Shown: positions 24,401-64,000, numbered from the stretch's first letter. The stretch: 64,000 bases of DNA from IMGVR_UViG_3300022866_000322:157343-221342, one strand, 5' to 3'. Notes: generated by a model not told the origin, from the letters alone. Program-made: numbers and translations.

Positions 24401-27400
24401 ACTGGAATTAAATTCAAAACCATAAGGTATTGTAATTTTTTGTTTTTTAAAGTCTCTAAAGATTACAGCACTGGCATCACCGTCAGTAACTTGATATGCG
24501 TTATTGTTAGGCTCGCTAGGTATAATAGTAAAGAATGGGCTGGTTATATCATACCCGCTTACTGTATACCCATTGGCTGTTCTTTGTACAATGACAGCAC
24601 TATATGTAATCTTCCTAATAGGGCTACCTTTGTATATCTTTAATGCATAGTTGTCATCGGGAATAACAACACTGTTGTTTATACTACTCGGACTGCTCTG
24701 CTCTGCCAGTAGTTCAATGAATTTTTTATCGGTATATCCTGCCACTTTGTTTAACAATTGAACATTTAGTTTTGCTAAATTTTCTTGTATTACTGTAGGC
24801 GCTGAACCTGCACCTAAGTTGGTTATGTAATCTGTTATCCAGTTTAAGTACCCAGCAGTGCGTTGTGTTACACCGTTTGCATCTACGTACCCGTTAACAT
24901 GAAGTGAGGTAGGGGTAAGGTGCTGACTTGTGTCAGTGATTTCAAATTGTCCAGTAAAACTATTTCTTTTGTATCTATGTACGTCTGCTTGTAGTCCGTA
25001 AAATCTAGCAGGTTTTGTTAGTGCCAACGCTAACATTAACGCATATGGATATTCACTACTGCGTCTCCATGCAAGTTCAACAGGACCTATATCTCCAACT
25101 GCATAACTTATATTAGCTCGACTACCATCAAAATCAGTGACGAGCATTTGCTCAGGACTACGTAAGTTACCGTTATCGTCTACTGGTATAAATTCACTTA
25201 GGTTTGGTCTTTGGTAACGTAGATCAATACCTTGTCTATCGCCACTGTGTATGTAGCCTATACTTAAATCACTCCATAGGGTGCTATTTCCGCCTGTGTA
25301 CGGAGAAACTCCATATCTGGTTTCCCAGTAGTCTGGCTTTTTGCTAAAGCCTAGCATTTCCCATGGATGCGTATGTGGTCTATCAGTGTCGTAGAAGTAT
25401 CTGTAAATGCTTCTCCAGGTTCCTGGTAAAGTTTCACCATTGACTATATCTCTAAATGCTTTGTAGTTCCAAGTGAACGGATCGCTTGCACTAAAATAAC
25501 TGTTTGTAGAAAAGTCAACTCTATTTGTGCCTACCCAGGCCAAAAATCCTTGGCTTAAAACTTGTGTAAATTCTGCTCTAGTATAGTCAGTGTCTCTGAA
25601 TTTGCCGGGCACGTAGTCAATGATGTTAAAAGTATCAGTATCATATTCAACCTTGACGTTGTTATAAATTCTACGCTCTAGTTCTAATAACAGATCATCT
25701 CTAAAGTCATTAAAGGCGGGAGTAATACTACCATCATGTCCTTGAATTACATTTGCTGGTGTACGCAGTGTATTGTCTAAATACTTCTCAGGAATGAACT
25801 TAGGATACATTCCCATCTTTGTAGGAGTTTCTGGGATGAAACTTCCGTCTGTATCACTGTACTCTACAATATCTATCTTGTCTTCAAATAACAATCTAAA
25901 ATTACTTGTGAAAGTTATTGCGGCACGATCTGTATTGAAGGTATAATCTCTGCCTTTTACTACTAAGGTCTTTGTTGTAACATCATCTACAGTTCTAGTC
26001 ACATAAACTAAAACAGATTTGTTACTCGGAATAGTGTCGTTGAATATACTTGTGATTTCGTATGCAGTGATCTCTGGGTCAAGAACAGTGTAAGTAGGAA
26101 TCAATGATCTATTGTCATCTCCATGTGGTATCATGTCACTACGGAACCACGGGAAACTACTGTTCTTAACGCTGTGCATTTGCAGAAGCACTGCATCAAA
26201 ACTAGTCTGCACGTTGTTTAAATCTAACTCAATCTTTCCTGCAACTTCTAAGAAATTCTTCCTGAATTTTGAGTATTCTCTATTGGCTAATTTAATGGCG
26301 TTAATCGAATCCATCGTTGGGTGATTTAAAAACAGTCCTGCATACACTGCAGGGGCACTATGCTGAAGTATACTTCCTGATGTGTTTTTATACACAATGT
26401 CTCTCAGGTTACTACTTCCAGGTACAGTACCCACAACACGTAAACTGTTATTTTTCAGCTCTATTAGATGATTCCTCATTTGCCCTAGTGTAACTGTAGA
26501 CAGATTTTTATTCAAAGTATTGATGTCTAAGTTAATAGGAACTTCGTAGTGTGCGTTAGCAGTGACCGGTATATCTTTATTAAAGATAGCAACAAACACT
26601 GCATCGTTTTTTGTAATCAGATCTGGATTAACCAATACTGCAAATTTATCTACTACTTTTGTAGTTGCAAAGTTACCCACGCTTACAATCTTGTTGTTGA
26701 CGTAAACTTTGATATGCGGGAAATTAGTACTAACGTCAGGCAAATTATCAATTGGGAATAAATTAGTTACGCCGTCGTATACAAAATCATAAATTTTAAA
26801 TTGTTTACTAAAATTGGTTGCAATTTCCCATACGTTGTCTCTGGCACATGTTGTAGTTGACACGTTCTTCTGTAAATAACCAGCATTCACTTTTTGTGGA
26901 GTTACAACATTGTTGGTCCCTGCCAGGTAAGTGAATGTTTGAGAATCAAAAGTGTTTTCAAATTCAATATCACCTTGATTCGTAAAGTTTTTGTAACTGA
27001 GAGGGAAACCCAATACTGTATCGTTACTGCCAGTTCCTCGCTTATAAGAAAATATCTTAGATCCAGTGAACGTTGTTCCAGTGAATGTACTTGCGTCGGA
27101 ATAACTTATGCCTTTACTGTCAACTACGTCAAATAACGGTTCTTGGTTATTTGCAGTTTTCTCTTGCGCTATAGTCCAACTGAAGCCATTGAAGTACCAT
27201 TGTTTACCACCATTGGTTCCTGACAGGACCAGCACAGTATTGTTGTCTACAACTGTTGCATCATCTGCTTCAACTAAGTATGCCTTGTAAACATCACTCG
27301 GGTCGTCTATTGCTTTTTCAATAGTAAAATTGTAAATTTTGTTTCTTACGTTGTCATCTAAGTCACTTGCAAATATAACTCTATCGCCGGTTGTAAGAGT

Positions 27401-29647
27401 GAGTGTCCCTATAGTAAAAACTGTTGTGTCGACCGATACCACACCTTGCACTTGTTGAAATGCTCTGGTAATAGTAGTGTCTAAAATGTCGACAGGTAAC
27501 TTAGCAACTGCTCCGCTATTATATAATTGGTAATCTGCGTCAAATTCAATAATTGGTCTGCTGGCACGTTGTGCTTGATCTAATAATACTTCTTGATCAA
27601 GATACCCTGCTGTCTTTTCTATAACATCTATGTGTACCCATCTATTGCCACGGCTCCATGCATTTCTGTCCAGGCTAGATCTGTTTACTGTGATGTAATC
27701 TTGGTACTCTGGTTGTAAATATACTTCAAAACTTGCGCCTGAGCCCGACCCGCCTGTTACCGAAACAGGATTAGTAGGTAATACTGTGTAGTTTCCTCGT
27801 TGTTTAATCTTAAATGTCTTTATTGATCCAGACTCCGGGGCTGTTACTGTAATTATAGGATTAGCCTCGTATCCACTGCCGCCACTTGCTAGTGTAACTG
27901 CTGTAACAACACCATTTGTCAATGTTGCTGTGGCACTAGCCAAACTTCCAAATGCACTTGATGGATTTGCAAAAGTTAACGTTGGCGTTGCTAAGTAACC
28001 GCTACCGCCATCTACAATAGTTACCGCCGTGACTGCCCCTGAAGAAGGATCTATAGTTGCTGACAATACCGCGGTATCTTTAGTTATGCTATCAACTACT
28101 GCTATTGCCGCAGTAGTAAAAGTTCCGCCTTGGATAGTGACTCTATCATTGACTTGATAGTTTAGTCCTCCAGCTGTAACAAAACTATCGTTTAGAGTTT
28201 CCACACTGATTAGCTCGTCTTCAGGCACTAGTCTGATTCCTGTGCCTACACCTTCGATATAATAGTTTTTGTTTCGATAACTTGCTGTAACTGTACTGTC
28301 AAAACTAATTTTTAAACCATTTGTAAATACCACACCGTTAGGACTTGTGTAATTTATTTCGCCTACTATGTCCCTATCAGGATCTATAGTGTCAACTACA
28401 GCATCAACAATGTTTATGATGCCACTGGCACCTGAATCAGCTTGATTTTGGTAATATAAATTTGTTAATGGGGCAGTAATGTATGGTACAAGTTCATAAA
28501 CAGAGTTTCTAACAAACCACTGTTTACTTGCGTATGTAGCGCCACCTTTAATTCTTACTTTATTGTTTTCAGGCACAGCAATTTTACGTACCAAGAAAAT
28601 TCTATCATTGCCGGCAGCGTCAGGCTGTATTGACACAGTGTAAACAGAAGTCCTTTCGGATAACGGAATTTGTACACTCTGATCCAAGTATACGACACCT
28701 TCCTCAGTTCTAGCAACATCAATCCAGAAACTATCATCAATGTAATTTCTATTAACGAATACAACTGTAGCACCATCTAAATATGCAACAGGACCATCAA
28801 TGCCGCCGTATGTGTCAATTAACTCCTGTGGCTTGGCTCCTTGCACTTGATTAAATGCCAAATCAGTAGCATAACTTACTGCTTCTACTGTAGGGAGATC
28901 TAAAAAGCTATCTTGCGCTGTTGCGCCAGGTACCGTGAAAGTTACAGTGCCCGAGTCAGTTCCATTATTCGAAACTCCCAGTACTCCCCTAGTTTCAACG
29001 TTACTCAGATCAGGATCTATACCGTCCTTGCCTGGCTTGCCTTGTATCCAGAAGTTGTTTCCTGGGTTATTAATTACAAACTCGTATACTCCGCCACGTG
29101 CTAGTGCAATACTTGGGTTAGGCACGTTGTCACTGCCAGTAAATTCAAAAGCGTTGTTTACAGGATTATATGTTACAGTAAACGTCTGGGGTGTGCTTAT
29201 GCCACTGGATGTAATTTGTACTGGGTTAGGTCCTGAACTTAACCAATAGTACTGGCTGAAGTTTACAAATTTATCAAAACTTAACTTAGGATCATACGTA
29301 TAAAACTCATTGTCGAACAATCTGTTGTGATTGTTTGTTAGGCCGCCTTCGTATCCAATTTTATTAACAATGTCTACATAAGTTGTTGCATAGTCTACTT
29401 TGTTAGTTATTTGATCTTTAATTATCACGCCAGGTTCTAGCTGATAGTCTGCTCTCGATGCAGTTGGTTCAGATACATAGCTATCAGTTGCTTTATAAGA
29501 AGGTGCTAGTTTTCTACCAATGTAACCATTGACTTGTTTAAGTTGTGGTTCATTAACTAGCTGATCAACTGTAGCGTTTAAAAACTTTTTATTAGTATCA
29601 GTTTGAAAAACGTCAGGTAAAAACTGGTGAGTTTTGAATGCTGCCAT
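15488..29647 (-). CDS. Giant multidomain baseplate wedge / adhesin protein (4719 aa)
   Basis: Uninterrupted 14.1-kb ORF directly downstream of gp6. It has FG-GAP-like repeats (DNFGRTVSI, DLFGSSLAIS, NFGSSLAT, RFGTDIQL, EKFGTAIGI, DDYGADIDI), a YncE-like beta-propeller (FFKPDGTKMY, FFREDGSRMY, FSTDGTRMY, FREDGKELF, MRHDGTRLF) and GSGY beta-repeats. Confidence 0.85.
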   Translation of the reverse strand: MAAFKTHQFLPDVFQTDTNKKFLNATVDQLVNEPQLKQVNGYIGRKLAPSYKATDSYVSEPTASRADYQLEPGVIIKDQITNKVDYATTYVDIVNKIGYEGGLTNNHNRLFDNEFYTYDPKLSFDKFVNFSQYYWLSSGPNPVQITSSGISTPQTFTVTYNPVNNAFEFTGSDNVPNPSIALARGGVYEFVINNPGNNFWIQGKPGKDGIDPDLSNVETRGVLGVSNNGTDSGTVTFTVPGATAQDSFLDLPTVEAVSYATDLAFNQVQGAKPQELIDTYGGIDGPVAYLDGATVVFVNRNYIDDSFWIDVARTEEGVVYLDQSVQIPLSERTSVYTVSIQPDAAGNDRIFLVRKIAVPENNKVRIKGGATYASKQWFVRNSVYELVPYITAPLTNLYYQNQADSGASGIINIVDAVVDTIDPDRDIVGEINYTSPNGVVFTNGLKISFDSTVTASYRNKNYYIEGVGTGIRLVPEDELISVETLNDSFVTAGGLNYQVNDRVTIQGGTFTTAAIAVVDSITKDTAVLSATIDPSSGAVTAVTIVDGGSGYLATPTLTFANPSSAFGSLASATATLTNGVVTAVTLASGGSGYEANPIITVTAPESGSIKTFKIKQRGNYTVLPTNPVSVTGGSGSGASFEVYLQPEYQDYITVNRSSLDRNAWSRGNRWVHIDVIEKTAGYLDQEVLLDQAQRASRPIIEFDADYQLYNSGAVAKLPVDILDTTITRAFQQVQGVVSVDTTVFTIGTLTLTTGDRVIFASDLDDNVRNKIYNFTIEKAIDDPSDVYKAYLVEADDATVVDNNTVLVLSGTNGGKQWYFNGFSWTIAQEKTANNQEPLFDVVDSKGISYSDASTFTGTTFTGSKIFSYKRGTGSNDTVLGFPLSYKNFTNQGDIEFENTFDSQTFTYLAGTNNVVTPQKVNAGYLQKNVSTTTCARDNVWEIATNFSKQFKIYDFVYDGVTNLFPIDNLPDVSTNFPHIKVYVNNKIVSVGNFATTKVVDKFAVLVNPDLITKNDAVFVAIFNKDIPVTANAHYEVPINLDINTLNKNLSTVTLGQMRNHLIELKNNSLRVVGTVPGSSNLRDIVYKNTSGSILQHSAPAVYAGLFLNHPTMDSINAIKLANREYSKFRKNFLEVAGKIELDLNNVQTSFDAVLLQMHSVKNSSFPWFRSDMIPHGDDNRSLIPTYTVLDPEITAYEITSIFNDTIPSNKSVLVYVTRTVDDVTTKTLVVKGRDYTFNTDRAAITFTSNFRLLFEDKIDIVEYSDTDGSFIPETPTKMGMYPKFIPEKYLDNTLRTPANVIQGHDGSITPAFNDFRDDLLLELERRIYNNVKVEYDTDTFNIIDYVPGKFRDTDYTRAEFTQVLSQGFLAWVGTNRVDFSTNSYFSASDPFTWNYKAFRDIVNGETLPGTWRSIYRYFYDTDRPHTHPWEMLGFSKKPDYWETRYGVSPYTGGNSTLWSDLSIGYIHSGDRQGIDLRYQRPNLSEFIPVDDNGNLRSPEQMLVTDFDGSRANISYAVGDIGPVELAWRRSSEYPYALMLALALTKPARFYGLQADVHRYKRNSFTGQFEITDTSQHLTPTSLHVNGYVDANGVTQRTAGYLNWITDYITNLGAGSAPTVIQENLAKLNVQLLNKVAGYTDKKFIELLAEQSSPSSINNSVVIPDDNYALKIYKGSPIRKITYSAVIVQRTANGYTVSGYDITSPFFTIIPSEPNNNAYQVTDGDASAVIFRDFKKQKITIPYGFEFNSSQQVTDFLVGYQRFLQSQGFLFVDNDDSLKQQKDFILSVKEFLHWTTQGWRVNNILVLSPVSDTLKVFEQTAIVDEIKNAPFGSRVLDLNFKPINKNEFSVYREDNLFTFQSNAQKSVGFAELNLVQTEHLLILDNVTEFNDVIYVPELGNRQYRLKFVGYKTDSWNGSLELPGFMFSSDSIDAWGGGTDYLKGSIVQHKNRYYTALENITADPNFQTTKWKQFDKAELQSGMLRNLASNAQLGVSFYDIDNQPANEEIQLFSDGITGFRERQYFTDLGIDVTTQSKYYQGLITQKGTPNSINALEGGIFGNLDSDIDWYENWAMRVGEYGSLDTNAFIETPLSDTAITKNPTLIQFTDNNNAAQEGTVAIIENDIFKISGTYNANVFVTEDRTQFPLLRPLPVAGFVNLADVDTTLFNLNNYDSLSASIDKIGTGYKIWVAKDFNGSWNVFRATYIDGLVFILRSRDDGSAEVVFNENHGLAVDDVVVIKNFDDRFDGAYKVGNIIDTTRFSITITRNLEALQEEAVISGSGLLYRLSSAKISNPVDIQSVMPVSGWLENDKVWVENLDNDGNWGVYNKTSPWVYNSKAELDPSKLSGNDNFGRTVSIEPNLAQLMYVGSPGSGEGRVNAFTRSVTNSWTASFALSANSTGLDSFGYKVVNAQGYVAVSAPDSSSGKGYVYIFKDGIIQQILTDAAGSASDLFGSSLAISRDANYLYIGASGANKVFCYQLNLRTAVDPVLLPVERYNLVLDANVSVAVNDTITYQSPGTTSSASGTVVFDSTRVLTNTNVVIITGNVAAFTDTDLIAINGANVAANIVSDTQSVATGTFSNVSILTSDPTEVFVYSQLRAVEYVPTIEYSVSGETITFVTPPATNDVIQVFTRGSFYTNLTTITGNASTNFGSSLATNSDGSVLTVGSDTAVVGTQGNDGLLYAYHRTITEFTTDGTSASFTAPDAFANSYRVLLNGVELTQDLDYYIIAPSTVQFPDVQTAGLTLTVETNNFVQDQIISPSLTGINGQRFGTDIQLCGTGCNLYGSAPSYFANQYSSGAVYRLVNTGRVYGNVTGTVSNATVTSGDSIVINDRPVEFTGTTITDVANDINGTGIPGVTASNALVFISNVTSGETESHWRLQITSNVQVATEKLNITSASTGTGLTDLGIEIYKHTQVVTHPNQIGEKFGTAIGISQSVGKLAISSEGADTTTPTTFDIADTVTIFDSLSTTFVKIVKDSGAVYLYDLIANPYESEDNPSIFAFSQKLTAPGVETGDDYGADIDIVNDIMVIGVTNDSDITVGGGSVYTYYNEGSKPGWELLRYKEPRVAIDAINSAFIYNKTSETIINYLDILDPVKGKLLGAVEQELDYIEEFDPASYNTTTASTGISNDSFYWTTQQIGKTWWDTSVANFIDYEQSTLLYRSINWGSLFPGSTVTIYEWVESDVLPSQYVGNGGDGVPKNADDSAYTQSTFVDPGTGIIVSKYYYWVSGKTSVDPVTANRRISTTLLEQYIRSPKDQNIPYLGLTSPSSVNLYNINDKTTGSDVILHLDTTTVENNDQLIHNEFGLVQQGTTTSAIPQRVIDKLRDSLRGEDSTGRLVPDITLKPQDRLGILSRPRQGLFLDRSAALEVFVNEANRLLALHPVLLTTTATSLYVQQPFPASYDAQVASYTDVEYLDTTGFADGYTILIPQDSRYENRWSLLEFNGTSREFDLIRSQSYKTDLWWTPSEWYDSTYIAGNAIAHTVNTYGDIQKLVLANNDYIKILDDGAGNWSTYRYETTGQLSLIAAENATVTLSSLLYDTTITLGFDTAVFDAVAFDKQAGSEIGNIFDSLYTQIFINSLATDFNKLFFTIINYVFEEQKNPDWIFKTSFIDVLHNLRSLEQLPTYSKDNQDFYKQYIDEVKPYRTQLKEFTPVYTKTDTATGSWTDFDIPARWYAEENTFRSPNIQVTSDSTYFTTDLYQPYADNYKLKVGEIIVGNIGQNYTIAPNVEITGGGGSGANATATISAADGTVTSITVTKAGSGYTTTPNVVINGTGEGATAYAMLNSEFDSQGGYNTVRSIDSTIKFDRITYTSNVAQWTANVAYEDTVVVNGNFANSYDLNRIELDGNANVAPQDTTITDVFFKPDGTKMYIAGDTSNSVYEYTLGTPWEVTTASNVAVANVNVQDTSVQGLFFREDGSRMYTVGDTSNSVYEYRLATPWFVNTAANISVVSINSQETSATSVEFSTDGTRMYVLGTANDTVFEYELSIPWLASSATYSTRSKSVASEENIPTGMRFREDGKELFVTGQQYNKIWSYTLSTAWDISTATLNNSADLNATNPTGLYMRHDGTRLFVADDVGNFVQQYDFNSNGITQIDGNLYITSGNIIFYNNTAYLATNANVSSQTVFDFTRFTEIDSGNVLLSAADRITSYYVPSFGRPGKDINQLMFGTSYPGNKISGETFTSNSFTLTSNVIGFNYTGHKITSANTQQVDFVDRGFNLNDPIKIEGMYETFNFENNATFRVVSVSRDEMMLSGQPIESIVTLSLGESISANEGDYITQTNSTANARVLNNYTSVKEIAVIQEKQGFLELDANVVRVNGVATTANVMDVLGSGTANVKISNLYIDDLLDSNIASFYTDTALGTRPEDINIAGGFYLDAYNSHAPEELVPGRMYDTLEMRVFTNTASNTASYGFRVFEPMDRDRSYYRISANSTTTLTANLALDDVNIFVDNAALLPDPGTGVGGSPGEVFINGELIYYYQKYDDAKMLSADVWTANTEFATDSLITYSSNVFLVLGNVFANANAYINTSNVKQVFANTISQLRRGVDGTGANVHYANARVVDSSLAQQLPNIALATTNSLTGEKKVAANVTWRVSLNNTISANIGDYITQTGPTANVRILETVANANVVAVDFVDGNLRIANANVSINGTTTTANVSALNILGEVLSTGNVSVTGKTIKQDYLWKAYGTGDTLDSSTTEWAEYIKAERSYTP

Positions 29648-44195: not shown

Positions 44196-45952
44196 ATAAT
44201 CTAACAGTAAAAAACTTCATGAGCGTGGGCAATGCTACCCAGGCTGTTAATTTTGGTCGCAAGGATTTAACTCTTGTGTTGGGTCAAAATTTGGACTTAG
44301 GTGGTGACGATACTGGCGCACGTAATGGTACAGGCAAGACAACTATAATTAATGCGCTAAGTTATGCGCTGTACGGTGAAGCACTAACAAAGATTCGCAA
44401 AGATAACTTGATAAACAAAACCAATGGTAAAAACATGTTGGTTACTATTGAGTTTGAGAACAGCGGTGTTGGTTATAAGATAGAGCGCGGGCGCAAGCCT
44501 AACACTGTGGCATTTTACGTAGGCGGGCAAAAACAAGAAATTACAGATGAGTCACAGGGTGATTCAAGAGAGACACAAGCAGAGATAGAACGCATGTTAA
44601 ATATGAGCCACGACATGTTTAAACATATTGTGGCACTAAACACATACACAGAGCCGTTTTTGAGTTTACGTGCAAATGATCAACGTACAATTATTGAGCA
44701 GTTACTAGGCATTACTATGCTCAGCGAAAAAGCAGATGTGCTCAAGGAACAAAACAAGCAAACCAAGGGCGATATTACAGAAGAAGAGTATCGTATCAAA
44801 GCAGTACAGGACGCTAATGAGCGTGTGCAAGGGCAGATCGAAGCTACAAAACGCAGACAAACCTTGTGGCAAAACAAAAAACAAGAAGAAGTTGATAAGT
44901 TGGCAGGGGCACTAGAAAACTTAGACGGTATAGATATCGAAGCAGAGTTAAATGCACACGACGCATTAGATAAGCACAGTGTAATATCTAAAGAAGTAAG
45001 CGAAGTAAATCGCTGGAAAGTGTCAGGTAACCAGGAATGCACACGTTTAGAGAAGCACATCACAAGTTTAACTTCGGAAGTAGCAAAGTTAGAAAAGCAT
45101 GAGTGCTATGCATGTGGTCAAGAAATACATGATGAAAAACACTTAGAAGTACTAGAGAAGAAGAAGGCAACACTAGAAGAAACGGAACAGCAACTCAATG
45201 AAAGTAAAGAAAAAGTACAAGCTCAAGTTGATCAACTCGAGAAACTGGGAGATCCAGGGCCAATACCCAATGTGTTCTACGACTCAAAAGAAGACGCGAT
45301 CAATCACAAAAACACAATCGAAAACTTAACTAACCAGCTTGAAACAAAATTAGCAGAATCTGATCCGTATGAAGAACAGATTACTGAAATGGAAACACAG
45401 GCGGTACAAGAAGTTGATTACGACAAGATAAACTCACTTACTAACATAAAAGAACATCAAGACTTTTTATTGAAACTATTAACAAACAAGGATAGTTTTA
45501 TACGTAAACGCATTATAGATCAAAATTTGAGTTATCTAAACACAAGACTAATACAGTACTTGGATAGGATTGGACTTCCGCATACTGTACAGTTTAATAA
45601 CGATCTTACAGTAAGTATTGAAGAACTAGGTAGAGAACTAGACTTTGACAACTTGAGCAGGGGTGAACGCAACAGACTGATACTTAGTATGAGTTGGGCG
45701 TTCCGTGACGTGTGGGAAAGTTTGTATCAACAGATTAATTTGATGTTTATTGACGAAGTGATTGACACTGGCATGGATGCTAGTGGTGTTGAAAACAGTT
45801 TAGCAATACTTAAAAAGATGGCACGTGAAGGTAACCGTAGTGTTTGGCTAGTATCACACAAGGATGAACTAGCAGGGCGTGTTAACAATGTATTAAGTGT
45901 AGTGAAAGAAAATGGGTTCACTACATATAACAACGATGTAGAAATATCTTAA
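44183..45952 (+). CDS. gp46: Recombination ATPase, Rad50/SbcC-like
   Basis: Walker A GARNGTGKTT; coiled coil with CYACG zinc hook; LSRGE signature; LMFIDEVID Walker B; VSHK. Confidence 0.95.
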   Translation: MFKVNNLTVKNFMSVGNATQAVNFGRKDLTLVLGQNLDLGGDDTGARNGTGKTTIINALSYALYGEALTKIRKDNLINKTNGKNMLVTIEFENSGVGYKIERGRKPNTVAFYVGGQKQEITDESQGDSRETQAEIERMLNMSHDMFKHIVALNTYTEPFLSLRANDQRTIIEQLLGITMLSEKADVLKEQNKQTKGDITEEEYRIKAVQDANERVQGQIEATKRRQTLWQNKKQEEVDKLAGALENLDGIDIEAELNAHDALDKHSVISKEVSEVNRWKVSGNQECTRLEKHITSLTSEVAKLEKHECYACGQEIHDEKHLEVLEKKKATLEETEQQLNESKEKVQAQVDQLEKLGDPGPIPNVFYDSKEDAINHKNTIENLTNQLETKLAESDPYEEQITEMETQAVQEVDYDKINSLTNIKEHQDFLLKLLTNKDSFIRKRIIDQNLSYLNTRLIQYLDRIGLPHTVQFNNDLTVSIEELGRELDFDNLSRGERNRLILSMSWAFRDVWESLYQQINLMFIDEVIDTGMDASGVENSLAILKKMAREGNRSVWLVSHKDELAGRVNNVLSVVKENGFTTYNNDVEIS

Positions 45953-45980
45953 GATCAATTGGTCTTGATAATTATATGTA

Positions 45981-46403
45981 ATGTCATGGTTATTTGAATC
46001 TAAAGAAATAGAAGTACTACCAGAAGATTGTGTTGGATTCGTTTATTTGATAACGAATTTAACAAATAACCGTAAATACATCGGGAAGAAGCTTGCACGG
46101 TTTAAAACCACCAAGCCCCCACTTAAAGGCAGGAAGAACAAACGCCGTGGAACAAAAGAAAGTAACTGGCGTGAATATTATGGCTCAAACGACGAACTCA
46201 ACAAAGACATAGAACAACTAGGCACAGAAAACTTTCAAAGAGAAATACTCTACTATTGTAAAAGCAAGGCAGAATGCAGTTATATCGAGGCACGAGAACA
46301 ATTCAGACACAAAGTCTTAGAAACACCACAATACTATAACGGACATATACAAGTCCGTGTCCATGGCTCCCACATTATAAACAAATTAAGTAGTAACAGC
46401 TAA
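45981..46403 (+). CDS. Small GIY-YIG-family nuclease-like protein
   Basis: GFVYLITNLTNNRKYIGKK (GIY-YIG), YYGSND, FQREIL, E..EQF..YYN. Catalytic domain only. Confidence 0.8.
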   Translation: MSWLFESKEIEVLPEDCVGFVYLITNLTNNRKYIGKKLARFKTTKPPLKGRKNKRRGTKESNWREYYGSNDELNKDIEQLGTENFQREILYYCKSKAECSYIEAREQFRHKVLETPQYYNGHIQVRVHGSHIINKLSSNS

Positions 46404-46826
46404 CACAGGCTAATCTCGTGTGTACCAAACCTGACAGTAACGTGTGCAGGGACGTAAGACTTGCCGCTACAGCAAGCACTCAATCACTACCCATATGGAT
46501 GAAGACTCTCAATGCTAGAGTTTGATTGTTTGAACAGGATTCAATAAAGCTAAAAAGACGTAGTAGCGATACTACACGTTTATGTAATATGTTAGCGTAT
46601 GTTATATAAATCGCCGTTGTTATAAAGACGGAGCTCGAGGTACCGGACAACCGCCTCTGTAATGCTCTAATGCTAAGTGACTGTTATACTCAGATGAAGC
46701 AGTTTACTTTTTTGCCCGCCCTGGGCAAAGAGTGACCATGTGATCTAGATGAAACGTCTAAAAACATATCATTAAAAAACAAGTTGATGAGTGATAACGA
46801 AATCAACAGACTAACGAAGTTAGTCT
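46404..46826 (+). ncRNA. Candidate structured non-coding RNA or origin-like element (unassigned)
   Basis: ~420 nt with no ORF in a gene-dense genome. It contains many stems, several with G-U pairs (details in findings). Confidence 0.55.
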
Positions 46827-47044
46827 TAAAAGAATGGCATTCCTGACTTTTTAGTTGTTTCTAGATTATCTTTGATTAGTTTGGACATAAGTGATCTATC
46901 TTCTTGTGACAAAGACATACCTTCATCATAGGAAAGACTACCCCGCATATACCAACACAATTTAAGGATTTCTTCTTTTAAGGCTTTTGACTGTTTATCT
47001 AATGTGTCAAAGTAATCAAGCATGTCTGATTCAGACATGGCCAA
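46826..47044 (-). CDS. Baseplate hub assembly protein, gp51-like
   Basis: EEILKLCWYMRGSLSYDEGMSL..EDR; sits after the gp26-like gene. Confidence 0.6.
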   Translation of the reverse strand: MAMSESDMLDYFDTLDKQSKALKEEILKLCWYMRGSLSYDEGMSLSQEDRSLMSKLIKDNLETTKKSGMPFF

Positions 47045-47049
47045 AAGCC

Positions 47050-47883
47050 TTAGCCGAAAAAATTACTGAACTCAAAACTCATTGAAGCTTCGTACTGCTT
47101 CTCGCATTCAGGGCAACCAACATCAAACGGTTTAATTTTGTTTTGCGTTGCCAAGTGTTCTACATGGGTCTTGATTGTTTCGTAAACTTTCCTATCACAG
47201 TTGTTTAAGAAGTCCAGTATGTGCTTTTTGTTGGTAACATTAGTTTCGTCGATCGTGATACTCTCAATGCTATCTACTATAACACTTACATTCAGATCCG
47301 TTACTTGTGGTAGTAACTCATTGAATCTTTTGGTTTTTTCTTCGTCACTTAGGTCACTTGCCATGATTGTTTGCAGTAAACTCTGTGTCTTGAAGTTTGC
47401 TAGGTTACTGTTGTTAACAGTTTCGAATAGTTGAGGTTTAAATTGTATGATTAGATCGTCTGACGCTATGCTGTCAAACACAGGTTCTGTCATGGTATCC
47501 ATTAACACTCGCAAGTCTATAGCGTGTTCGTTAGTTTCGTTGCAATGCTTGCATTGTGATGTGATAGTAAGTTCATCACCGTAACTGGCTATTCTTAATG
47601 CTACAAGAATAGCGTCAAGGTCACATGCAGGAATCTTCCATGCATTTTTAATGTTGGGTAAACAGCTGGTAATTACATTAACAGTGCCTTCTCCGTTAAG
47701 CAGTGCGTCCGGAGTTTTGATTGTGATCTCATCCTTGACTGTCATCGGGTATACTGGAATCTGTCCTGACTCAGGAAGATCTATAGATCCTGCAGGCCAA
47801 TGCTTGCCTTTGCTAGGGAGTTCTAAATAAATTGCAGGTTGTCTAAAGTGTTTTGCTAACGGGTTATTTGGTTCATTTACCAT
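47050..47883 (-). CDS. gp26: Baseplate hub subunit, gp26-like
   Basis: NPLAKHFRQP.IYLELPSKG..VYPMTVKDE..TPDALLNG..DLDAILVALRIASYG..CKHC..CPEC. Start placed at the ATG at 47883 (AGGA RBS). Confidence 0.8.
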   Translation of the reverse strand: MVNEPNNPLAKHFRQPAIYLELPSKGKHWPAGSIDLPESGQIPVYPMTVKDEITIKTPDALLNGEGTVNVITSCLPNIKNAWKIPACDLDAILVALRIASYGDELTITSQCKHCNETNEHAIDLRVLMDTMTEPVFDSIASDDLIIQFKPQLFETVNNSNLANFKTQSLLQTIMASDLSDEEKTKRFNELLPQVTDLNVSVIVDSIESITIDETNVTNKKHILDFLNNCDRKVYETIKTHVEHLATQNKIKPFDVGCPECEKQYEASMSFEFSNFFG

Positions 47884-47895
47884 GGTTTTGAATCC

Positions 47896-47903
47896 TATAA
47901 ATA
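47896..47903 (+). promoter_or_regulatory. Late promoter (TATAAATA) for the tape measure gene
   Basis: Exact T4 late consensus. Confidence 0.8.
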
Positions 47904-47920
47904 GTATTACTAGATACAAT

Positions 47921-54988: not shown

Positions 54989-56173
54989 ATGACACAAGCA
55001 CTATTAGAAAGCCGTTGGGGCGAAACAAAAGATGCCCTGTTAGAAGGACTAAATGGCTCCAAGCGTACTACAATGGGAGTTATTCTTGAAAACACCCGCA
55101 AGAGTTTGCAAGAGACCGCTACTGCTGGCTCAACAGCCGCTGGTAACGTTGCTACATTGAACCGTGTAATTTTACCAGTCATTAGACGAGTAATGCCAAC
55201 CGTTATTGCTAACGAAATTGTTGGTGTACAGCCTATGACAGGTCCAGTTGCACAGATTCACACACTACGTGTACGTTATGCTGATAACGCTACATCAACA
55301 GCAGGTGCGCCATTTGATACAAGCGTTACTGCTGGTGACGAAGCACTATCACCATTTAAGATTGCTACAGTATATTCAGGTAGTACTGCTACCGGTCGTG
55401 CTGACAGCACAAGTACACTTGAAGGTACACCAGGTAACAAGATCAACGTCCAGATCTTAAAGCAAGTTGTTGAAGCTAAGACACGTAAGCTATCAGCACG
55501 TTGGACATTCGAAGCCGCTCAAGATGCGCAAGCAATGCACGGCTTAGATATTGAAGCAGAAGTTATGGCAGCTCTTGCACAAGAGATTACAGTTGAAATT
55601 GATCAAGAAGTTCTTGGTTCACTTCGTAGTCTTGCTGGTACTGAGTTCACATATAACCAGGCAGCAGTATCTGGTACAGCTACTTACGTTGGTGATGAGC
55701 ATGCCGCATTGGCAGTTCTTATCAACAGAACAGCTAACTTGATTGCATCACGCACACGTCGTGGCGCAGGTAACTGGGCAGTTGTTTCACCAGCCGCTTT
55801 AACAGTTCTCCAAAGCGCAACAACAAGTGCTTTTGCACGTACAACTGAAGGCACATTTGAAGCACCTACAAACACCAAGTTTGTTGGTACATTGAATGGC
55901 GCAATGAAAGTTTATGTAGACAGCTATGCTGGCGATGCACAGGCAGTTCTAGTTGGTTACAAAGGTTCAAGCGAAGCAGATGCAGCCGCATTCTATTGCC
56001 CATATGTTCCATTAATGAGCAGTGGTGTTGTGTTGGATCCATCAACACTTGAGCCAGTAGTTGGCTTTATGACCCGCTACGGGTACGTAGAGCTCACCAA
56101 TACAGCATCATCGTTTGGTAATGCAGCCGACTATCTCGGGGAAATCGCAGTTTCTAACTTGTCTTTCCAGTAA
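54989..56173 (+). CDS. gp23: Major capsid protein
   Basis: RRVMPTVIANEIVGVQPMTGP..KTRKLSARWTFEAAQDAQAMHGLDIEAE..EITVEIDQE..FYCPYVPL..GFMTRYG. Confidence 0.97.
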   Translation: MTQALLESRWGETKDALLEGLNGSKRTTMGVILENTRKSLQETATAGSTAAGNVATLNRVILPVIRRVMPTVIANEIVGVQPMTGPVAQIHTLRVRYADNATSTAGAPFDTSVTAGDEALSPFKIATVYSGSTATGRADSTSTLEGTPGNKINVQILKQVVEAKTRKLSARWTFEAAQDAQAMHGLDIEAEVMAALAQEITVEIDQEVLGSLRSLAGTEFTYNQAAVSGTATYVGDEHAALAVLINRTANLIASRTRRGAGNWAVVSPAALTVLQSATTSAFARTTEGTFEAPTNTKFVGTLNGAMKVYVDSYAGDAQAVLVGYKGSSEADAAAFYCPYVPLMSSGVVLDPSTLEPVVGFMTRYGYVELTNTASSFGNAADYLGEIAVSNLSFQ

Positions 56174-56306: not shown

Positions 56307-56311
56307 TATAT

Positions 56312-56363
56312 ACGTTCAGCTGAGAGGCCGGAAGTAGACTTCATTATTAGTCGAAGGAACGCA
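56312..56363 (+). ncRNA. Glutamine-I riboswitch aptamer (glnA RNA motif), copy 1
   Basis: P1 CGTTC/GAACG; P2 GCT-GAGA-GGC; CGGAAGTA E-loop strand; P3 GACT-TCATTATT-AGTC; GAAG. This fits the glnA motif layout as I recall it. Confidence 0.85.
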
Positions 56364-56368
56364 TTATC

Positions 56369-56420
56369 ATCGTTCATCTCGAAAGAGACGGAAGTAGGTA
56401 ATGGTTACCGAAGGAACGCA
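56369..56420 (+). ncRNA. Glutamine-I riboswitch aptamer (glnA RNA motif), copy 2
   Basis: P1 CGTTC/GAACG; P2 TCTC-GAAA-GAGA; CGGAAGTA; P3 GGTAA-TGG-TTACC; GAAG. Compensatory stem changes relative to copy 1. Confidence 0.9.
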
Positions 56421-56447
56421 CCTAACTTTAAAAAGGAGGGTGTTAAA

Positions 56448-56944: not shown

Positions 56945-57030
56945 CTACTGTTCATATAAATCTTTATATGTTCTTATGCGGAACCAAACCGCGTAGGCCT
57001 AGAACGCCACTTAATTTAAGGAGAAACAAA

Positions 57031-57651
57031 ATGGGAAGACCTATAGCAAAAAAGTTTATTGGCGATGGCGTTGGCAAGATTGCAATTACAGCAGTTAAGT
57101 TTGCAAGCGGCAGCGAAGTTCTTAGCGGTGCAGATATTCAAAGACAAAGAACAGCTAAAAGTTTCGTTGTATCTGACGGAGCTAAAACAGAAACATGTAC
57201 ACTGGTTAACAAGTCAATTGGTGCCTTGGGTGCTAGTGAATTTACCATCAACGTTACCGACAACGATGGCGACCAACAGCAAGTTACCAAGATGACCAAC
57301 AGAAAAGTTTACACTGAAGGTACTACTTGGAAACAGTGGACAAAAGATGCCGACGGCTCAGCATCGGGTGCAGTTCAAAAAACAATCACAGGTGCAACAG
57401 CGGCCAACCCAGTTGTTATTACATCTGCCGGTCACGGACTTGCAAATGGAACTAAAATTTCAATCCGTAAAGTAGTTGGTATGGTTGAGCTTAACACTGA
57501 AACCGGCTATACAGTGGCAAGTACTGCAACTAACACTTTTGCATTATCTGGAGTTGACGGTAGTGGATTTACTACTTACACATCAGGTGGTGATGTAACT
57601 GTTGCGGCAGCAGGTGCAGACGATGTGATAATAGATACACAACAGTCTTAA
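57031..57651 (+). CDS. Virion protein with a C-terminal beta domain (E1_FCCH-like, common in phage tail proteins)
   Basis: ITGATAANPVVITSAGHGL.NG..I.I..V.GM.ELN..YTV..NTFAL. Start moved to the ATG at 57031 (AAGGAG RBS). Confidence 0.65.
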   Translation: MGRPIAKKFIGDGVGKIAITAVKFASGSEVLSGADIQRQRTAKSFVVSDGAKTETCTLVNKSIGALGASEFTINVTDNDGDQQQVTKMTNRKVYTEGTTWKQWTKDADGSASGAVQKTITGATAANPVVITSAGHGLANGTKISIRKVVGMVELNTETGYTVASTATNTFALSGVDGSGFTTYTSGGDVTVAAAGADDVIIDTQQS

Positions 57652-62556: not shown

Positions 62557-64000
62557 TGGCTATATCAGATACACAAAAAGTTGACTACTTGTGGAAGAAA
62601 CTAGGTTACTCAGCAACTAAAACAGACACCAACGCTAACAAAAAAGCACCAAACGAAGCAATAGCAAGTCCGCTATTGATGCGTGCCGATACAATATGGT
62701 CACAGAGTTCGACTATACCAGCAACACTTCCAGGTAGCAGTGCATCACCTGTAACAGTTTACCCAACTAGCAATCCAATTGAAACTACACTAGACGGAAC
62801 TTCTACAGCAAACAGAACATGGAAAACAGGAACAACAGACTGGATCAGTCCTGAGTTTGGCTCAACTTACCAAGTAAAAGTTTATATTCATACGTCAAGT
62901 GATGCCGCAGGAGCAAGCGGCGGCGATCAAGTATTCGCAACTGGTTCCGGAAACAACGACGAATGGTTCTTTGATTACCAGTCTGGTGTATTGCACTTTA
63001 TTGGTGACAACTTACCTAATGGAATAAGTTTTACAGGCAAGAGTGTTTATATCAGCGGCGGCCGATACACAGGCACGTTTGGTACAGGGACAATCGCAGA
63101 AGCAACCATCACTGGCGGCAATGTTACAGCAAATATCAGTGGTAACATTTTAGGAACGTTTGGTCGTTTTACTAGCAATGTTACCGCTCCTTGGTTTGTT
63201 GGAAACATTGATTCAGATATTGGTACGTTTGATACCAGTTTGTACGCCGAACAGCTCACAGTAAGCAGTAATAGTTCATTTAATGATAGTAGTGCTACTA
63301 TACAGTACTTAACTATTAACGGTGAAACAATTACCAGTACAAACGAGCATGTGGTTATAAGTCCAAATATATCCGGCGCCAACAATGTAGTAAAAATTGG
63401 CGGAGTAACTGCACTGGATGTACCAACAGGAAACACAGCACAGCGACCAGCAATAGCAGATGCAGGTTATATTAGATTTAACACATCTACCTCAACGTTA
63501 GAATGGTATACAGGATCCACATGGGCGTCAGGTTCTAGCGGAATTACACAACAGACAATTAATCCAGATGGTAGCGCAAGTACATTTACATTAGACCAAG
63601 AGTCTACAGCAGATGGTGTTTTGGTTAGCATCAACGGTACTAGCCAAAACCCAGATACAGCGTATAGCGTCAGCGGTACAGACATAACATTTACAGAAGT
63701 TCCACTGTCATCTGACATTATTGATGTACGTTTCCTAGCTGTAGCAGTTGCAAGCTCAGGTCTCAACAGTTTAATTCAAGATACCAGTCCACAGTTGGGC
63801 GGCAACTTAGAAGTCAACAGCAAGTTTATTACCAGTGCAAGTAATGGCAATATACCAATCAAAGCAGACGGAACAGGCGAGGTTACGCTACAAGGTAACG
63901 TGATTAGCCTAACAGGAAACTTAGAAGTCAGTGCCACATCTGGCACACCTAGCGATACCACAGACCCAGCAGCCTGGCTCAAAGTTTACGTCGGCGGAAC
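62556..64000 (+). CDS. Virion structural / fibre protein (partial; runs off the window edge)
   Basis: Not in the ORF track. The ATG at 62556 gives MAISDTQKVDYLWKKLGY..EWFFDYQSGVL..PTGNTAQRP..GYIRFNT..LEWY; no stop seen in the stretches I translated. Confidence 0.85.
   Translation, partial: MAISDTQKVDYLWKKLGYSATKTDTNANKKAPNEAIASPLLMRADTIWSQSSTIPATLPGSSASPVTVYPTSNPIETTLDGTSTANRTWKTGTTDWISPEFGSTYQVKVYIHTSSDAAGASGGDQVFATGSGNNDEWFFDYQSGVLHFIGDNLPNGISFTGKSVYISGGRYTGTFGTGTIAEATITGGNVTANISGNILGTFGRFTSNVTAPWFVGNIDSDIGTFDTSLYAEQLTVSSNSSFNDSSATIQYLTINGETITSTNEHVVISPNISGANNVVKIGGVTALDVPTGNTAQRPAIADAGYIRFNTSTSTLEWYTGSTWASGSSGITQQTINPDGSASTFTLDQESTADGVLVSINGTSQNPDTAYSVSGTDITFTEVPLSSDIIDVRFLAVAVASSGLNSLIQDTSPQLGGNLEVNSKFITSASNGNIPIKADGTGEVTLQGNVISLTGNLEVSATSGTPSDTTDPAAWLKVYVGG

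What the first reader, a model, noticed from the sequence alone, without database searches (positions are those of the whole stretch)
46404..46826. ~420-nt ORF-free, densely structured element directly downstream of a stand-alone GIY-YIG gene
Seen: the largest non-coding gap in the window, packed with stems. These include CCTG/CAGG, CTTGC/GCAAG, a three-way junction closed by CAATCA/TGATTG (containing CC-ATAT-GG and GACTCT/AGAGTT), GTAGTA-GCGA-TACTAC and a long G-U-rich TTATGTAATATG/TATGTTATATAA stem. There are also CCGT/ACGG, a GAGC/GCTC-closed GAGG..CCTC domain and TTTGCCC/GGGCAAA. The G-U pairs suit a plus-strand RNA. I cannot match it to tRNA, tmRNA, RNase P, SRP, group I/II introns or known ribozymes. 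Inference: an uncharacterised large phage ncRNA, possibly a partner of the adjacent minimal GIY-YIG nuclease, which lacks its own DNA-binding domain. That would be analogous to nuclease-plus-RNA pairs such as IscB/omegaRNA. A replication origin is an alternative.
Basis: partly seen in the sequence, partly recalled or inferred. Interest (0 to 1): 0.78.

Follow-up and report, generated by a model that had tools for sequence, protein, structure and literature searches.

The report
Large phage RNA extending Polynucleobacter-1 motif
The gap holds a real, roughly 430-base folded RNA of uncultured giant aquatic phages whose first third is the already catalogued Polynucleobacter-1 motif, whose larger and more widely conserved remainder is undescribed, and which does not appear to be a guide for the neighbouring GIY-YIG nuclease.

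Summary

It is not wholly new. Bases 46398-46531 match Rfam RF01718 (Polynucleobacter-1) at 93.7 bits. The 2010 paper that described that motif already noted that it lies downstream of this gene family.

What is new:
- The element is about three times longer than the Rfam model.
- The unannotated 3' part (46532-46826) is the more widely conserved core. It has one covariation-backed pseudoknot, a second plausible one, a GNRA loop and a tandem G.A motif.
- Two 7-9-nt words (46692-98 and 46747-53) flank an invariant hairpin. They are identical within every genome (126 unique RNAs, 12 variants, at least 29 joint changes) but differ between genomes.

The nuclease-partner idea is not supported:
- In some relatives the RNA follows a PD-(D/E)XK nuclease, a tRNA or inserted ORFs.
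- GIY homologues exist without the RNA.
- No GIY-RNA co-evolution is seen.

The function is unknown. My best reading is a stable trans-acting RNA that presents the same word twice to one partner.

The parts
45981..46403 (+). Upstream gene for a 140-aa stand-alone GIY-YIG nuclease of the SegE-like family. It is context for the RNA, not shown to be part of it.
   Evidence: Pfam PF19835 E 1e-36. phrog_447, labelled 'NAD synthetase', plus homing-endonuclease phrogs. AlphaFold model with pLDDT 87; best PDB fold is the I-TevI catalytic domain. Invariant residues include Y22, Y33, R87, E103 and N120.
46398..46531 (+). 5' domain, equal to Rfam RF01718 Polynucleobacter-1. Helices: P1 46403-07/46419-23, P2 46431-34/46447-50, P3 46460-64/46472-76, P4 46481-86/46523-28 closing a junction with 46491-92/46497-98, and P5 46504-09/46517-22.
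   Evidence: cmscan 93.7 bits, E 1e-20, full model 1-141. My own CM R1 hits 44 of 82 sources, all on the plus strand. Covariation. The 5' tail 46399-401, which overlaps the GIY stop codon, may pair with the P1 loop 46408-10 (46399/46410 GC:52 AU:21).
46549..46575 (+). Conserved single strand GCUAAAAAGAC, then hairpin P6 (46560-65/46570-75) with a GNRA tetraloop (GCGA).
   Evidence: Alignment A3. 5 of 6 pairs are compensatory. Top mutual-information pair 46561/46574.
46578..46611 (+). Long hairpin P7 (46578-84/46605-11 and 46586-91/46598-603). Its loop 46593-98 forms pseudoknot PK1.
   Evidence: 12 of 13 pairs are compensatory and many are G-U.
46593..46675 (+). Pseudoknot PK1: the P7 loop UAGCGU (46593-98) pairs with AUGCUA (46670-75).
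   Evidence: 6 of 6 pairs are compensatory and 98.5% are canonical. Examples: 46596/46672 CG:60 UA:18; 46597/46671 GC:51 AU:25.
46612..46667 (+). Most conserved core. Invariant GCCGUUGU (46613-20). Helix P10 (46631-34/46664-67) closes hairpin P9 (46637-41/46653-57), which has the invariant loop ACCGGACAACC. Probable pseudoknot PK2 is 46616-20 with 46647-51.
   Evidence: Alignment A3. P10 has 4 of 4 compensatory pairs. PK2 is 99.7% canonical but nearly invariant (46620/46647 UA:71 AU:5 GC:1). This part is also found in loci without an RF01718 hit.
46677..46700 (+). Module M2: GUGAC, about 11 nt, then the word AGAUGAA (46692-98).
   Evidence: The word is identical to that of M3 in every homologue.
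46710..46730 (+). Near-invariant hairpin P11 (UUUUGCCC / GGGCAAAG) between the two words.
   Evidence: It is replaced by other strong hairpins in divergent subfamilies.
46732..46755 (+). Module M3: GUGAC, about 11 nt, then the word AGAUGAA (46747-53), 55 nt after the M2 word.
   Evidence: 46692/46747 GG:45 AA:33. 46696/46751 GG:56 AA:22. 46698/46753 UU:39 AA:34 GG:5. At least 29 joint changes on the tree.
46756..46782 (+). Linker that varies in length and sequence.
   Evidence: Alignment A3.
46783..46807 (+). Hairpin P12: a 6-bp stem, tandem sheared G.A (G46789 A46790 / G46799 A46800), 2 bp, and a GNNA tetraloop.
   Evidence: 5 of 6 and 2 of 2 pairs are compensatory. 46792/46797 CG:67 UA:9.
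46809..46825 (+). Terminal hairpin P13, with C(GNA)G or C(GNNA)G loops when read on the plus strand. It abuts the stop codon of the convergent gene and is the likely 3' end or weak terminator.
   Evidence: 4 of 7 pairs are compensatory. Scored as a terminator-like hairpin on the minus strand. Only 2-4 U follow it on the plus strand.
46826..47044 (-). Convergent 72-aa ORF, followed by a T4-type baseplate gene at 47050-47919. This is the syntenic right boundary.
   Evidence: tblastn synteny in most loci. Pfam PF12322 for the 289-aa protein.

Best explanation
SHOWN:
- Window 46398-46826 encodes one plus-strand, multi-domain, pseudoknotted RNA of about 430 nt.
- Its 5' third is the Rfam motif Polynucleobacter-1. 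Its 3' two-thirds are an undescribed and more widely conserved core.
- It is a fixed feature of a clade of uncultured aquatic myoviruses whose contigs reach 347 kb.
- It sits at the convergent junction between the recombination-nuclease genes (SbcD-like, gp46-like, then a small nuclease) and the baseplate genes.
- It starts at the stop codon of the upstream same-strand ORF, whichever ORF that is.

INFERRED:
- It is made as the 3' end of that operon's transcript. It is bounded by the terminal hairpin and persists as a folded RNA that acts in trans, probably as a ribonucleoprotein.
- Its working part is the 3' core. There, two identical single-stranded 7-9-nt words are held on either side of an invariant hairpin.
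- The words are free to change between phages but never differ within one. I therefore take them to engage the same partner twice, or one partner successively, rather than to be fixed structural residues.
- It is not a guide or cofactor specific to the GIY-YIG nuclease. That protein more likely acts on DNA by itself, because a PD-(D/E)XK resolvase-like nuclease occupies its slot in some relatives.
For: - Identity: RF01718 at 93.7 bits.
- Extension: the 295-nt tail is 70-94% identical in all RF01718-positive loci. Full-length profile hits occur in 95 loci (78 unique), and 3'-half-only hits in a further 56.
- Structure: RNAalifold gives 48 of 81 pairs compensatory. The manual model gives 64 of 95, with 93% canonical against 37% when slid.
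- Strand: G-U 648 against A-C 101.
- Pseudoknot PK1: 6 of 6 pairs compensatory.
- Synteny.
- Duplicated words: 126 unique RNAs with 12 variants, always equal. 9 of 9 supported and 16 of 16 total independent contrasts change together.
- Independence from GIY.
- Transcription: metatranscriptome contigs span the GIY 3' half plus the whole RNA contiguously.
Against: - No direct evidence that a discrete stable RNA accumulates. Depth in the metatranscriptome contigs is flat across the genes and the RNA, and DNA carry-over is not excluded.
- No partner has been identified. No third copy or complement of the word lies within 3-8 kb, and no other column covaries with the words.
- The terminal hairpin has only a weak U tract.
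- GIY is still the upstream neighbour in the great majority of loci, so a functional link cannot be ruled out by synteny alone.
Confidence: 0.5

Rival explanations
1. The RNA is the specific partner or guide of the adjacent GIY-YIG nuclease, as omegaRNA is for IscB or TnpB. It would supply the target recognition that the 140-aa protein lacks.
For: - The RNA is adjacent and on the same strand in most loci, and it begins at the GIY stop codon.
- The protein has no extra domain.
- The RNA has variable linkers and variable duplicated words that could in principle be guides.
Against: - The RNA core is kept with a PD-(D/E)XK nuclease in place of GIY.
- It occurs after a tRNA with no nuclease on the contig.
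- It is separated from GIY by 0.8-2 kb of other ORFs in more than 10 loci.
- GIY homologues in Syn9, Melnitz and P-SSM2 sit elsewhere without the RNA.
- GIY columns carry less information about the word states (maximum 0.24-0.49) than gp46-like or baseplate controls do (0.41-0.85).
- The locus is syntenic, with no element ends.
- The best solved fold match of the predicted model is only the I-TevI catalytic domain, with no added domain that could suggest RNA binding.
Confidence: 0.07
2. It is a purely cis-acting 3' untranslated region. It would act as a terminator, an insulator between convergent transcription units, or an exonuclease-resistant cap that stabilises the upstream operon mRNA.
For: - It always abuts the stop codon of the upstream ORF and the stop codon of the convergent ORF.
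- It ends in a hairpin.
- RNA contigs join the GIY 3' half and the RNA.
Against: - About 430 nt with pseudoknots, invariant loops and duplicated co-evolving words is far more than termination or stabilisation needs.
- The U tract is weak.
- The RNA keeps its architecture when other genes are inserted on either side and next to a tRNA in L163.
Confidence: 0.15
3. It marks a replication origin or another DNA-level site. The transcript would act as a structured primer or R-loop RNA, and the duplicated words would be iteron-like protein-binding sites.
For: - It lies next to recombination and replication genes at a strand-switch point.
- Repeats that are identical within a genome but differ between genomes are typical of iterons (established knowledge).
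Against: - The strong plus-strand G-U asymmetry and the compensatory pairs show selection on a single strand, not on duplex DNA.
- There are only two copies of a 7-9-nt word, 51-62 nt apart.
- No AT-rich unwinding element or further repeats were seen.
Confidence: 0.1
4. It is a catalytic or templating RNA. It could be a ribozyme, or a template on which a polymerase jumps between the two identical words. Jumping would give rolling-circle copying of the roughly 55-nt unit, as recalled for the DRT2 non-coding RNA, the HBV DR1/DR2 repeats and the take-off and landing sites of T4 gene 60.
For: - Identity of the two words with free sequence is what donor and acceptor sites of a template switch require.
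- An invariant hairpin lies between them.
- The ornate, pseudoknotted fold is typical of ribozymes.
Against: - No reverse transcriptase or comparable gene was seen among the ORFs scanned in the window.
- The unit length varies from 51 to 62 nt, and concatemers are not open reading frames (reasoned from the sequence).
- No backward joints appear in the contigs laid, although contigs could not show them.
- There is no Rfam ribozyme hit.
Confidence: 0.1
5. The region is degenerate or unrecognised coding sequence, such as small ORFs or a decayed gene.
For: Mechanical ORFs of 34-56 aa exist on both strands.
Against: - The substitution pattern is pairwise compensatory, not codon-periodic.
- Indels are not multiples of three.
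- Stop codons are conserved in all frames (for example UGA in GUGAC).
Confidence: 0.01

Closest known systems
Rfam RF01718, Polynucleobacter-1 RNA motif (Weinberg et al. 2010, PMC2864571)
   Same: Window 46398-46531 is a full-length member, with the same helices. It has the same gene context: downstream of the GOS11034 / PSSM2_218 family, which is this GIY-YIG family. It comes from the same aquatic metagenomic habitat. The function is unknown in both cases.
   Different: The Rfam model covers only 134 of about 430 nt. The 3' two-thirds (pseudoknot PK1, the invariant GGUACCGGACAACCGCC hairpin, the duplicated words and two 3' hairpins) are not in the model, yet they are more widely conserved than the Rfam part. 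The 2010 authors found no instance in a sequenced phage. Here the carriers are phage contigs of up to 347 kb.
Large ornate RNAs of unknown function from phages and metagenomes (GOLLD, ROOL, HEARO, from the same 2010 survey and later work). This comparison is recalled, not tested.
   Same: Several hundred nucleotides, many helices and pseudoknots, phage or prophage association, sometimes next to tRNA genes (as in L163), and no known function at discovery.
   Different: No sequence or covariance-model similarity: no other Rfam hit at E up to 10. It is smaller than GOLLD or ROOL. The duplicated, co-evolving words are not a described feature of those RNAs.
omegaRNA of IscB / TnpB
   Same: A structured RNA of a few hundred nucleotides encoded next to and co-oriented with a small nuclease gene. 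It starts at the 3' end of the ORF.
   Different: The nuclease here is GIY-YIG, not RuvC or HNH. There is no transposon, there are no element ends, and no terminal guide abuts a boundary. The RNA persists with a different nuclease or with none. No co-evolution is seen.
Free-standing GIY-YIG homing endonucleases of T4-like phages (SegA-E) and the I-TevI catalytic domain
   Same: The protein matches the SegE GIY-YIG Pfam domain, and its model is closest to the I-TevI catalytic domain.
   Different: At 140 aa it has no C-terminal DNA-binding domain. It is conserved at a fixed syntenic position rather than sporadically. A PD-(D/E)XK resolvase-like nuclease replaces it in some relatives, which suggests a housekeeping DNA-processing role.
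Direct repeats required for template switching or hopping (DRT2 non-coding RNA, HBV DR1/DR2, T4 gene 60 take-off and landing codons). These are recalled, not tested.
   Same: Two short identical words about 50-60 nt apart with a hairpin between them. Identity is required but the sequence is free.
   Different: No associated polymerase or ORF is known here, and no product has been detected.

Membership tests
Rfam RF01718 Polynucleobacter-1 | Covariance-model score at or above the gathering score of 37 bits over the whole model | tested here: met
   93.7 bits, E 1e-20, model positions 1-141.
Rfam RF01718 Polynucleobacter-1 | Model helices maintained by compensatory changes in relatives | tested here: met
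   13 of 33 pairs are compensatory in 8 sequences. P1, P3, P4 and P5 are 95-100% canonical, with 4-5 covarying pairs each in 78 sequences.
Rfam RF01718 Polynucleobacter-1 | Lies downstream of the GOS11034 / PSSM2_218 gene family | tested here: met
   Text of the 2010 supplement. PSSM2_218 against the window GIY protein: 41% identity, E 3e-25.
Nuclease guide RNA (omegaRNA-like) | Obligate co-occurrence of the RNA with its nuclease gene | tested here: not met
   The RNA occurs with PD-(D/E)XK instead of GIY. It occurs with a tRNA and no nuclease on the contig. GIY occurs without the RNA.
Nuclease guide RNA (omegaRNA-like) | Located inside a mobile element, with a guide at the element boundary | tested here: not met
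   The gp46-like / nuclease / RNA / baseplate order is conserved across about 200 loci. No variable terminal segment abuts a boundary.
Nuclease guide RNA (omegaRNA-like) | RNA-dependent target cleavage | not testable with these tools
   Needs biochemistry.
Free-standing GIY-YIG homing endonuclease (Seg-like) | GIY-YIG catalytic domain with conserved Tyr, Tyr, Arg, Glu and Asn | tested here: met
   PF19835 E 1e-36. Invariant Y22, Y33, R87, E103 and N120 in 26 homologues. The top fold match is I-TevI, though weak (E 0.1, probability 0.84).
Free-standing GIY-YIG homing endonuclease (Seg-like) | Sporadic, mobile distribution and a C-terminal DNA-binding domain | tested here: not met
   The syntenic position is fixed. 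The protein has 140 aa, and the Pfam domain covers residues 3-123.
Group I intron | Match to the intron model and flanking exons of an interrupted gene | tested here: not met
   No Intron_gpI hit at E up to 10. The upstream gp46-like and GIY ORFs are complete, and the downstream gene is convergent.
Intrinsic terminator | GC-rich hairpin followed by a U tract | tested here: inconclusive
   Hairpin P13 is conserved, but only 2-4 U follow it on the plus strand. The scan flags it on the minus strand.
Iteron-type replication origin | Several tandem protein-binding repeats plus an AT-rich unwinding element, with selection on duplex DNA | tested here: not met
   Only two copies of the word. The strand-specific G-U excess argues for a single-stranded functional form. 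Origin activity itself was not tested.
Box C/D-like K-turn modules | GA.AG tandem between a UGAUGA-like and a CUGA-like box, bound by an L7Ae-type protein | not testable with these tools
   There is only a sequence resemblance (GUGA and rGAUGA in each module). The 'box' varies in divergent subfamilies.

The most novel reading that the evidence does not exclude
The 3' core is a new kind of RNA device. It holds two identical, freely evolving 7-9-nt words on either side of an invariant hairpin. The words could be donor and acceptor sites for programmed template jumping, giving rolling-circle copying of a roughly 55-nt unit. They could instead be twin recognition elements for one nucleic-acid or dimeric protein partner. 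Either way it would be a jumbo-phage RNA mechanism with no described counterpart.
Probability: 0.12. Interest if true: 0.9.

Novelty: new variant of a known kind. Interest (0 to 1): 0.6.

Why it matters
A 16-year-old orphan motif turns out to be the variable front end of a much larger RNA that is kept by a whole clade of uncultured giant phages. That redefines the family's boundaries and supplies its hosts, its strand, a pseudoknotted structure model and a clear negative on the most attractive hypothesis, an RNA-guided GIY-YIG nuclease.

The strict within-genome identity of two short words that vary between genomes is a sharp, testable constraint. It points to a specific mode of action, either the same partner bound twice or template switching. 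That makes an RNA of unknown function experimentally approachable.

Tried and rejected
- Known RNA classes: tRNA and tmRNA gave none in the window. Other Rfam families in the tail gave only noise; the best was cow-rumen-2 at 21 bits, E 0.34.
- Phage isolates: no DNA match to the RNA in 50,697 records. Melnitz, Syn9 and P-SSM2 carry the GIY homologue in other contexts; no RNA family was found at the Melnitz copy, and the Syn9 and P-SSM2 copies are followed directly by other annotated genes. The PA5oct junction has neither GIY nor the RNA.
- The genome-contig scan used too loose a pattern. It gave 120 mostly random hits and one real one, L163. That scan was wasted.
- Pairing between the M2 and M3 loops is rejected: matched 3.26 against mismatched 3.35.
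- A third copy or complement of the word near the locus is rejected: own word 0.85/0.52 against other words 0.87/0.47. No extra modules occur elsewhere in the window.
- Co-evolution of the words with GIY or the 72-aa ORF gave no signal above the control proteins.
- Coding, translational bypass and slippery-site readings are rejected because of conserved stops and indels that are not multiples of three.
- The hammerhead reading of UUGAUGAG..CGAAA is rejected. The flanks covary as a plain stem, and the 'core' is not conserved.
- Metatranscriptome coverage was flat and uninformative about a discrete species.
- The PDB sequence search for GIY gave nothing.
- I did not use the count of structure pairs, because it would have required typing a very long structure string. 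Equivalent counts were computed in a script.

Full report
**1. Observation**

The GIY-YIG ORF ends at 46403, and the next gene is a convergent 72-aa ORF ending at 46826. No ORF of 60 aa or more lies between them. The gap is the second-longest such stretch in the window, not the longest: 62557-63046 is 490 nt.

The plus strand folds better than its shuffles (MFE -109.4 kcal/mol, z -2.49, 1 of 100 shuffles as good). The minus strand is weaker (z -1.67).

The decisive evidence is comparative and is given in sections 3 and 4.

**2. A known family covers the first third**

A scan of the window against Rfam 15 places RF01718, the Polynucleobacter-1 RNA, at 46398-46531 on the plus strand. The score is 93.7 bits against a gathering score of 37, with E 1e-20 and the whole model aligned. 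Nothing else in 45900-47100 rises above noise.

The only paper in the library that names the motif is Weinberg et al. 2010 (PMC2864571). Its supplement makes four points:
- Most examples lie downstream of genes of family GOS11034, with possible homology to PSSM2_218 of cyanophage P-SSM2.
- No example was found in a sequenced phage.
- The function is left open.

PSSM2_218, annotated 'NAD synthetase', is 41% identical to the window's GIY protein (E 3e-25). The protein itself matches Pfam PF19835 (SegE GIY-YIG domain) at E 1e-36.

**3. The element is three times larger than the Rfam model**

I fetched 80 IMG/VR loci that encode GIY homologues. A covariance model built from eight Rfam-positive sequences hit 44 of 82 sources. 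Every hit was on the plus strand and lay after the GIY gene, directly in most loci and after an inserted small ORF in a few.

The remaining 295 nt of the window's gap (46532-46826) are 70-94% identical in essentially all of those loci.

A profile of the full-length alignment (A3, 33 sequences) finds:
- end-to-end matches in about 40 of the first loci;
- after a pattern scan of IMG/VR, 95 full-length loci in all, 78 of them unique;
- a further 56 loci that match only the 3' half, roughly window 46610-46826.

The unannotated 3' part is therefore the more widely conserved core, and the Rfam part is a replaceable front domain.

Still more divergent elements of about 400 nt occupy the same slot in other GIY loci: the L007/8/9/30/34/53 type, the L031/75/14 type and the L010/11/25 type. 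Some share the 3' end of the profile.

**4. Structure and strand**

RNAalifold on A3 predicts 81 pairs, 48 of them with double compensatory changes.

On 78 unique full-length sequences I scored a manual model of 95 pairs:
- 93.2% of cells are canonical, against 36-38% when the 3' partner is slid by 1 or 2 columns.
- 64 pairs show compensatory double changes.
- G-U pairs outnumber A-C combinations 648 to 101; the two are about equal in the slid controls.

An RNA read from the minus strand would show the opposite G-U/A-C bias. The functional strand is therefore the plus strand, and the selected object is single-stranded.

Mutual information with APC correction and a helix search added these features:
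- Pseudoknot PK1 joins the loop of the long hairpin (46593-98) to 46670-75. All six pairs covary.
- A likely second pseudoknot, PK2, joins the invariant GCCGUUGU (46616-20) to the invariant loop ACAAC (46647-51). It rests on one covarying pair.
- A possible 2-3-bp pairing joins the 5' tail, which contains the GIY stop codon, to the first hairpin loop.
- Further motifs are a GNRA loop on 46560-75, and a hairpin at 46783-807 with tandem sheared G.A pairs and a GNNA loop.
- The terminal hairpin 46809-25 has loops that read C(GNA)G only on the plus strand.

CCGT/ACGG is not.

**5. Who carries it, and where**

The gene order is conserved across about 200 loci: SbcD-like (Metallophos), small ORFs, gp46-like (SbcC-type), a small nuclease, the RNA, then a convergent 72-aa ORF and a T4-type baseplate gene.

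Carrier contigs reach 262-347 kb, so these are jumbo phages. The gp46-like protein is closest, at 50%, to the PA5oct-group jumbo phages. Those phages have neither GIY nor the RNA at that junction.

The window's DNA is held by salt-lake metagenome runs, and close relatives occur in marine and salt-marsh metatranscriptomes. The RNA contigs laid on the window cover the GIY 3' half and the whole RNA without a break, for example 46158-46854. Their depth is the same as over the neighbouring genes. This is compatible with co-transcription, but it shows no enrichment and does not exclude DNA carry-over.

**6. Is it the nuclease's partner?**

Evidence against:
- (a) In L237, L249 and L312 the gene between gp46-like and the RNA is a PD-(D/E)XK endonuclease (PF24608, E 1e-25; phrog 'RusA-like Holliday junction resolvase'), not GIY. 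The RNA core is kept.
- (b) In L163, a 4.4-kb contig binned with a Methylococcaceae genome, the RNA (RF01718 at 62 bits, plus the tail) follows a tRNA gene. No nuclease gene is on the contig.
- (c) In more than ten loci, 0.8-2 kb of other ORFs separate GIY from the RNA. In others, extra genes lie between the RNA and the baseplate genes.
- (d) GIY homologues in Melnitz, Syn9 and P-SSM2 sit in other neighbourhoods (next to nrdB in Melnitz and Syn9). No RNA family was found at the Melnitz copy, and the Syn9 and P-SSM2 copies are followed directly by other annotated genes.
- (e) The variable RNA positions carry less information about GIY residues (maximum normalised MI 0.24-0.49) than about the control proteins gp46-like and baseplate (0.41-0.85).
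- (f) Nothing marks a mobile element.

The protein looks like an intact catalytic domain. Y22, Y33, R87, E103 and N120 are invariant. The model has pLDDT 87, and its best solved fold is the I-TevI catalytic domain.

Replacement by a resolvase-type nuclease suggests a DNA-processing role within the recombination module. The premise that a GIY-YIG protein lacking a DNA-binding domain needs an RNA is not compelling. From memory, T4 endonuclease II is a stand-alone GIY-YIG enzyme of similar size.

**7. The unexplained feature**

Two modules lie 55 nt apart, each made of GUGAC, about 11 nt and a heptamer: 46677-700 and 46732-55. They flank the near-invariant hairpin 46710-30.

The heptamers are identical to each other in all 78 full-length sequences, although eight variants occur. 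Over all subfamilies, 126 unique RNAs carry 12 variants, always the same word twice, at 51-62-nt spacing.

The most divergent elements use quite different words: UGCGAAUAG twice in L008 and GUAAGAUA twice in L009. L007 is the one exception, where the two copies differ at a single base.

On a tree built without these columns, the heptamer changes at least 29 times, and both copies change together each time. Independent contrasts agree 9 of 9 on supported branches (p 0.004) and 16 of 16 overall.

I checked and excluded several explanations:
- No other column covaries with these positions.
- The module loops do not pair with each other.
- No third copy or complement lies nearby.
- The region is not coding.

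An identity constraint with free sequence is what one expects in three situations:
- two sites that engage the same partner;
- donor and acceptor sites of a template switch;
- a two-fold symmetric non-Watson-Crick duplex read by a dimer.

I could not discriminate between these.

**8. Verdict**

It is wrong on novelty of the 5' third, and the nuclease-partner idea is unsupported.

Function remains unknown. My best reading, at about 0.5, is a stable folded RNA made from the 3' end of the nuclease operon that acts in trans through its 3' core. The rivals are a cis-acting UTR (0.15), origin or primer RNA (0.1), a template or ribozyme (0.1) and a GIY guide (0.07).

I class it as a new variant of a known kind, with interest 0.6.

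Noticed in passing
window 56311-56365, 56369-56422 and 56953-57033: Two tandem glutamine (glnA) riboswitch aptamers (46.7 and 61.1 bits) and a freshwater-2 RNA (63.7 bits). They lie just after the gp23-like major capsid gene (54989-56173) and before the ORF at 56968-57651.
   Followed up: no
window 62557-63046: A 490-nt stretch without any ORF of 60 aa or more, longer than the finding's gap. It has no Rfam hit at E up to 1, and its fold is no better than shuffles (z +0.62). It is not obviously a structured RNA.
   Followed up: partly
L249:265-771, L237:2614-3126, L312 (reverse-complemented) 4612-5118: In three relatives a PD-(D/E)XK endonuclease (PF24608; phrog 'RusA-like Holliday junction resolvase') occupies the slot of the GIY-YIG gene, between gp46-like and the RNA. 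This is a non-homologous nuclease replacement.
   Followed up: yes
L007:3415-3849, L008:3189-3582, L009:3418-3802, L031:3430-4000, L075:3679-4118, L010:3409-3930: GIY loci without an RF01718 hit carry other conserved non-coding elements of about 400 nt in the same position. There are at least three subfamilies. Some share the 3' end of the RNA profile, and most also contain a word duplicated around a strong hairpin.
   Followed up: partly
L163:38-108 and 378-770 (CANGLL010000166.1, Methylococcaceae MAG): The RNA sits about 270 nt downstream of a tRNA gene on a 4.4-kb contig binned with a bacterial genome. Short direct repeats lie between the tRNA and the RNA, and a small ribbon-helix-helix-like ORF lies downstream. 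It could be a mis-binned phage or plasmid fragment, or an integrated element.
   Followed up: partly
L324:26712-27149 (P-SSM2 PSSM2_218), L321:2953-3420 (Syn9 gp202): Homologues of this GIY-YIG protein are widely annotated 'NAD synthetase' in cyanophage records and in phrog_447. This looks like a propagated misannotation of a GIY-YIG nuclease domain.
   Followed up: partly
window 46487-46501: Inside the Rfam domain, positions 46490 and 46500 vary as C/U against U/C (UC:46, CU:32). They lie beside a covarying pair, 46487/46501 (CG:67, GC:11). This suggests a pyrimidine-pyrimidine pair in an internal loop that the Rfam structure does not include.
   Followed up: no
window 15488-29647 (minus strand): A single 4719-aa ORF, presumably a giant structural protein, consistent with a jumbo-phage origin.
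   Followed up: no
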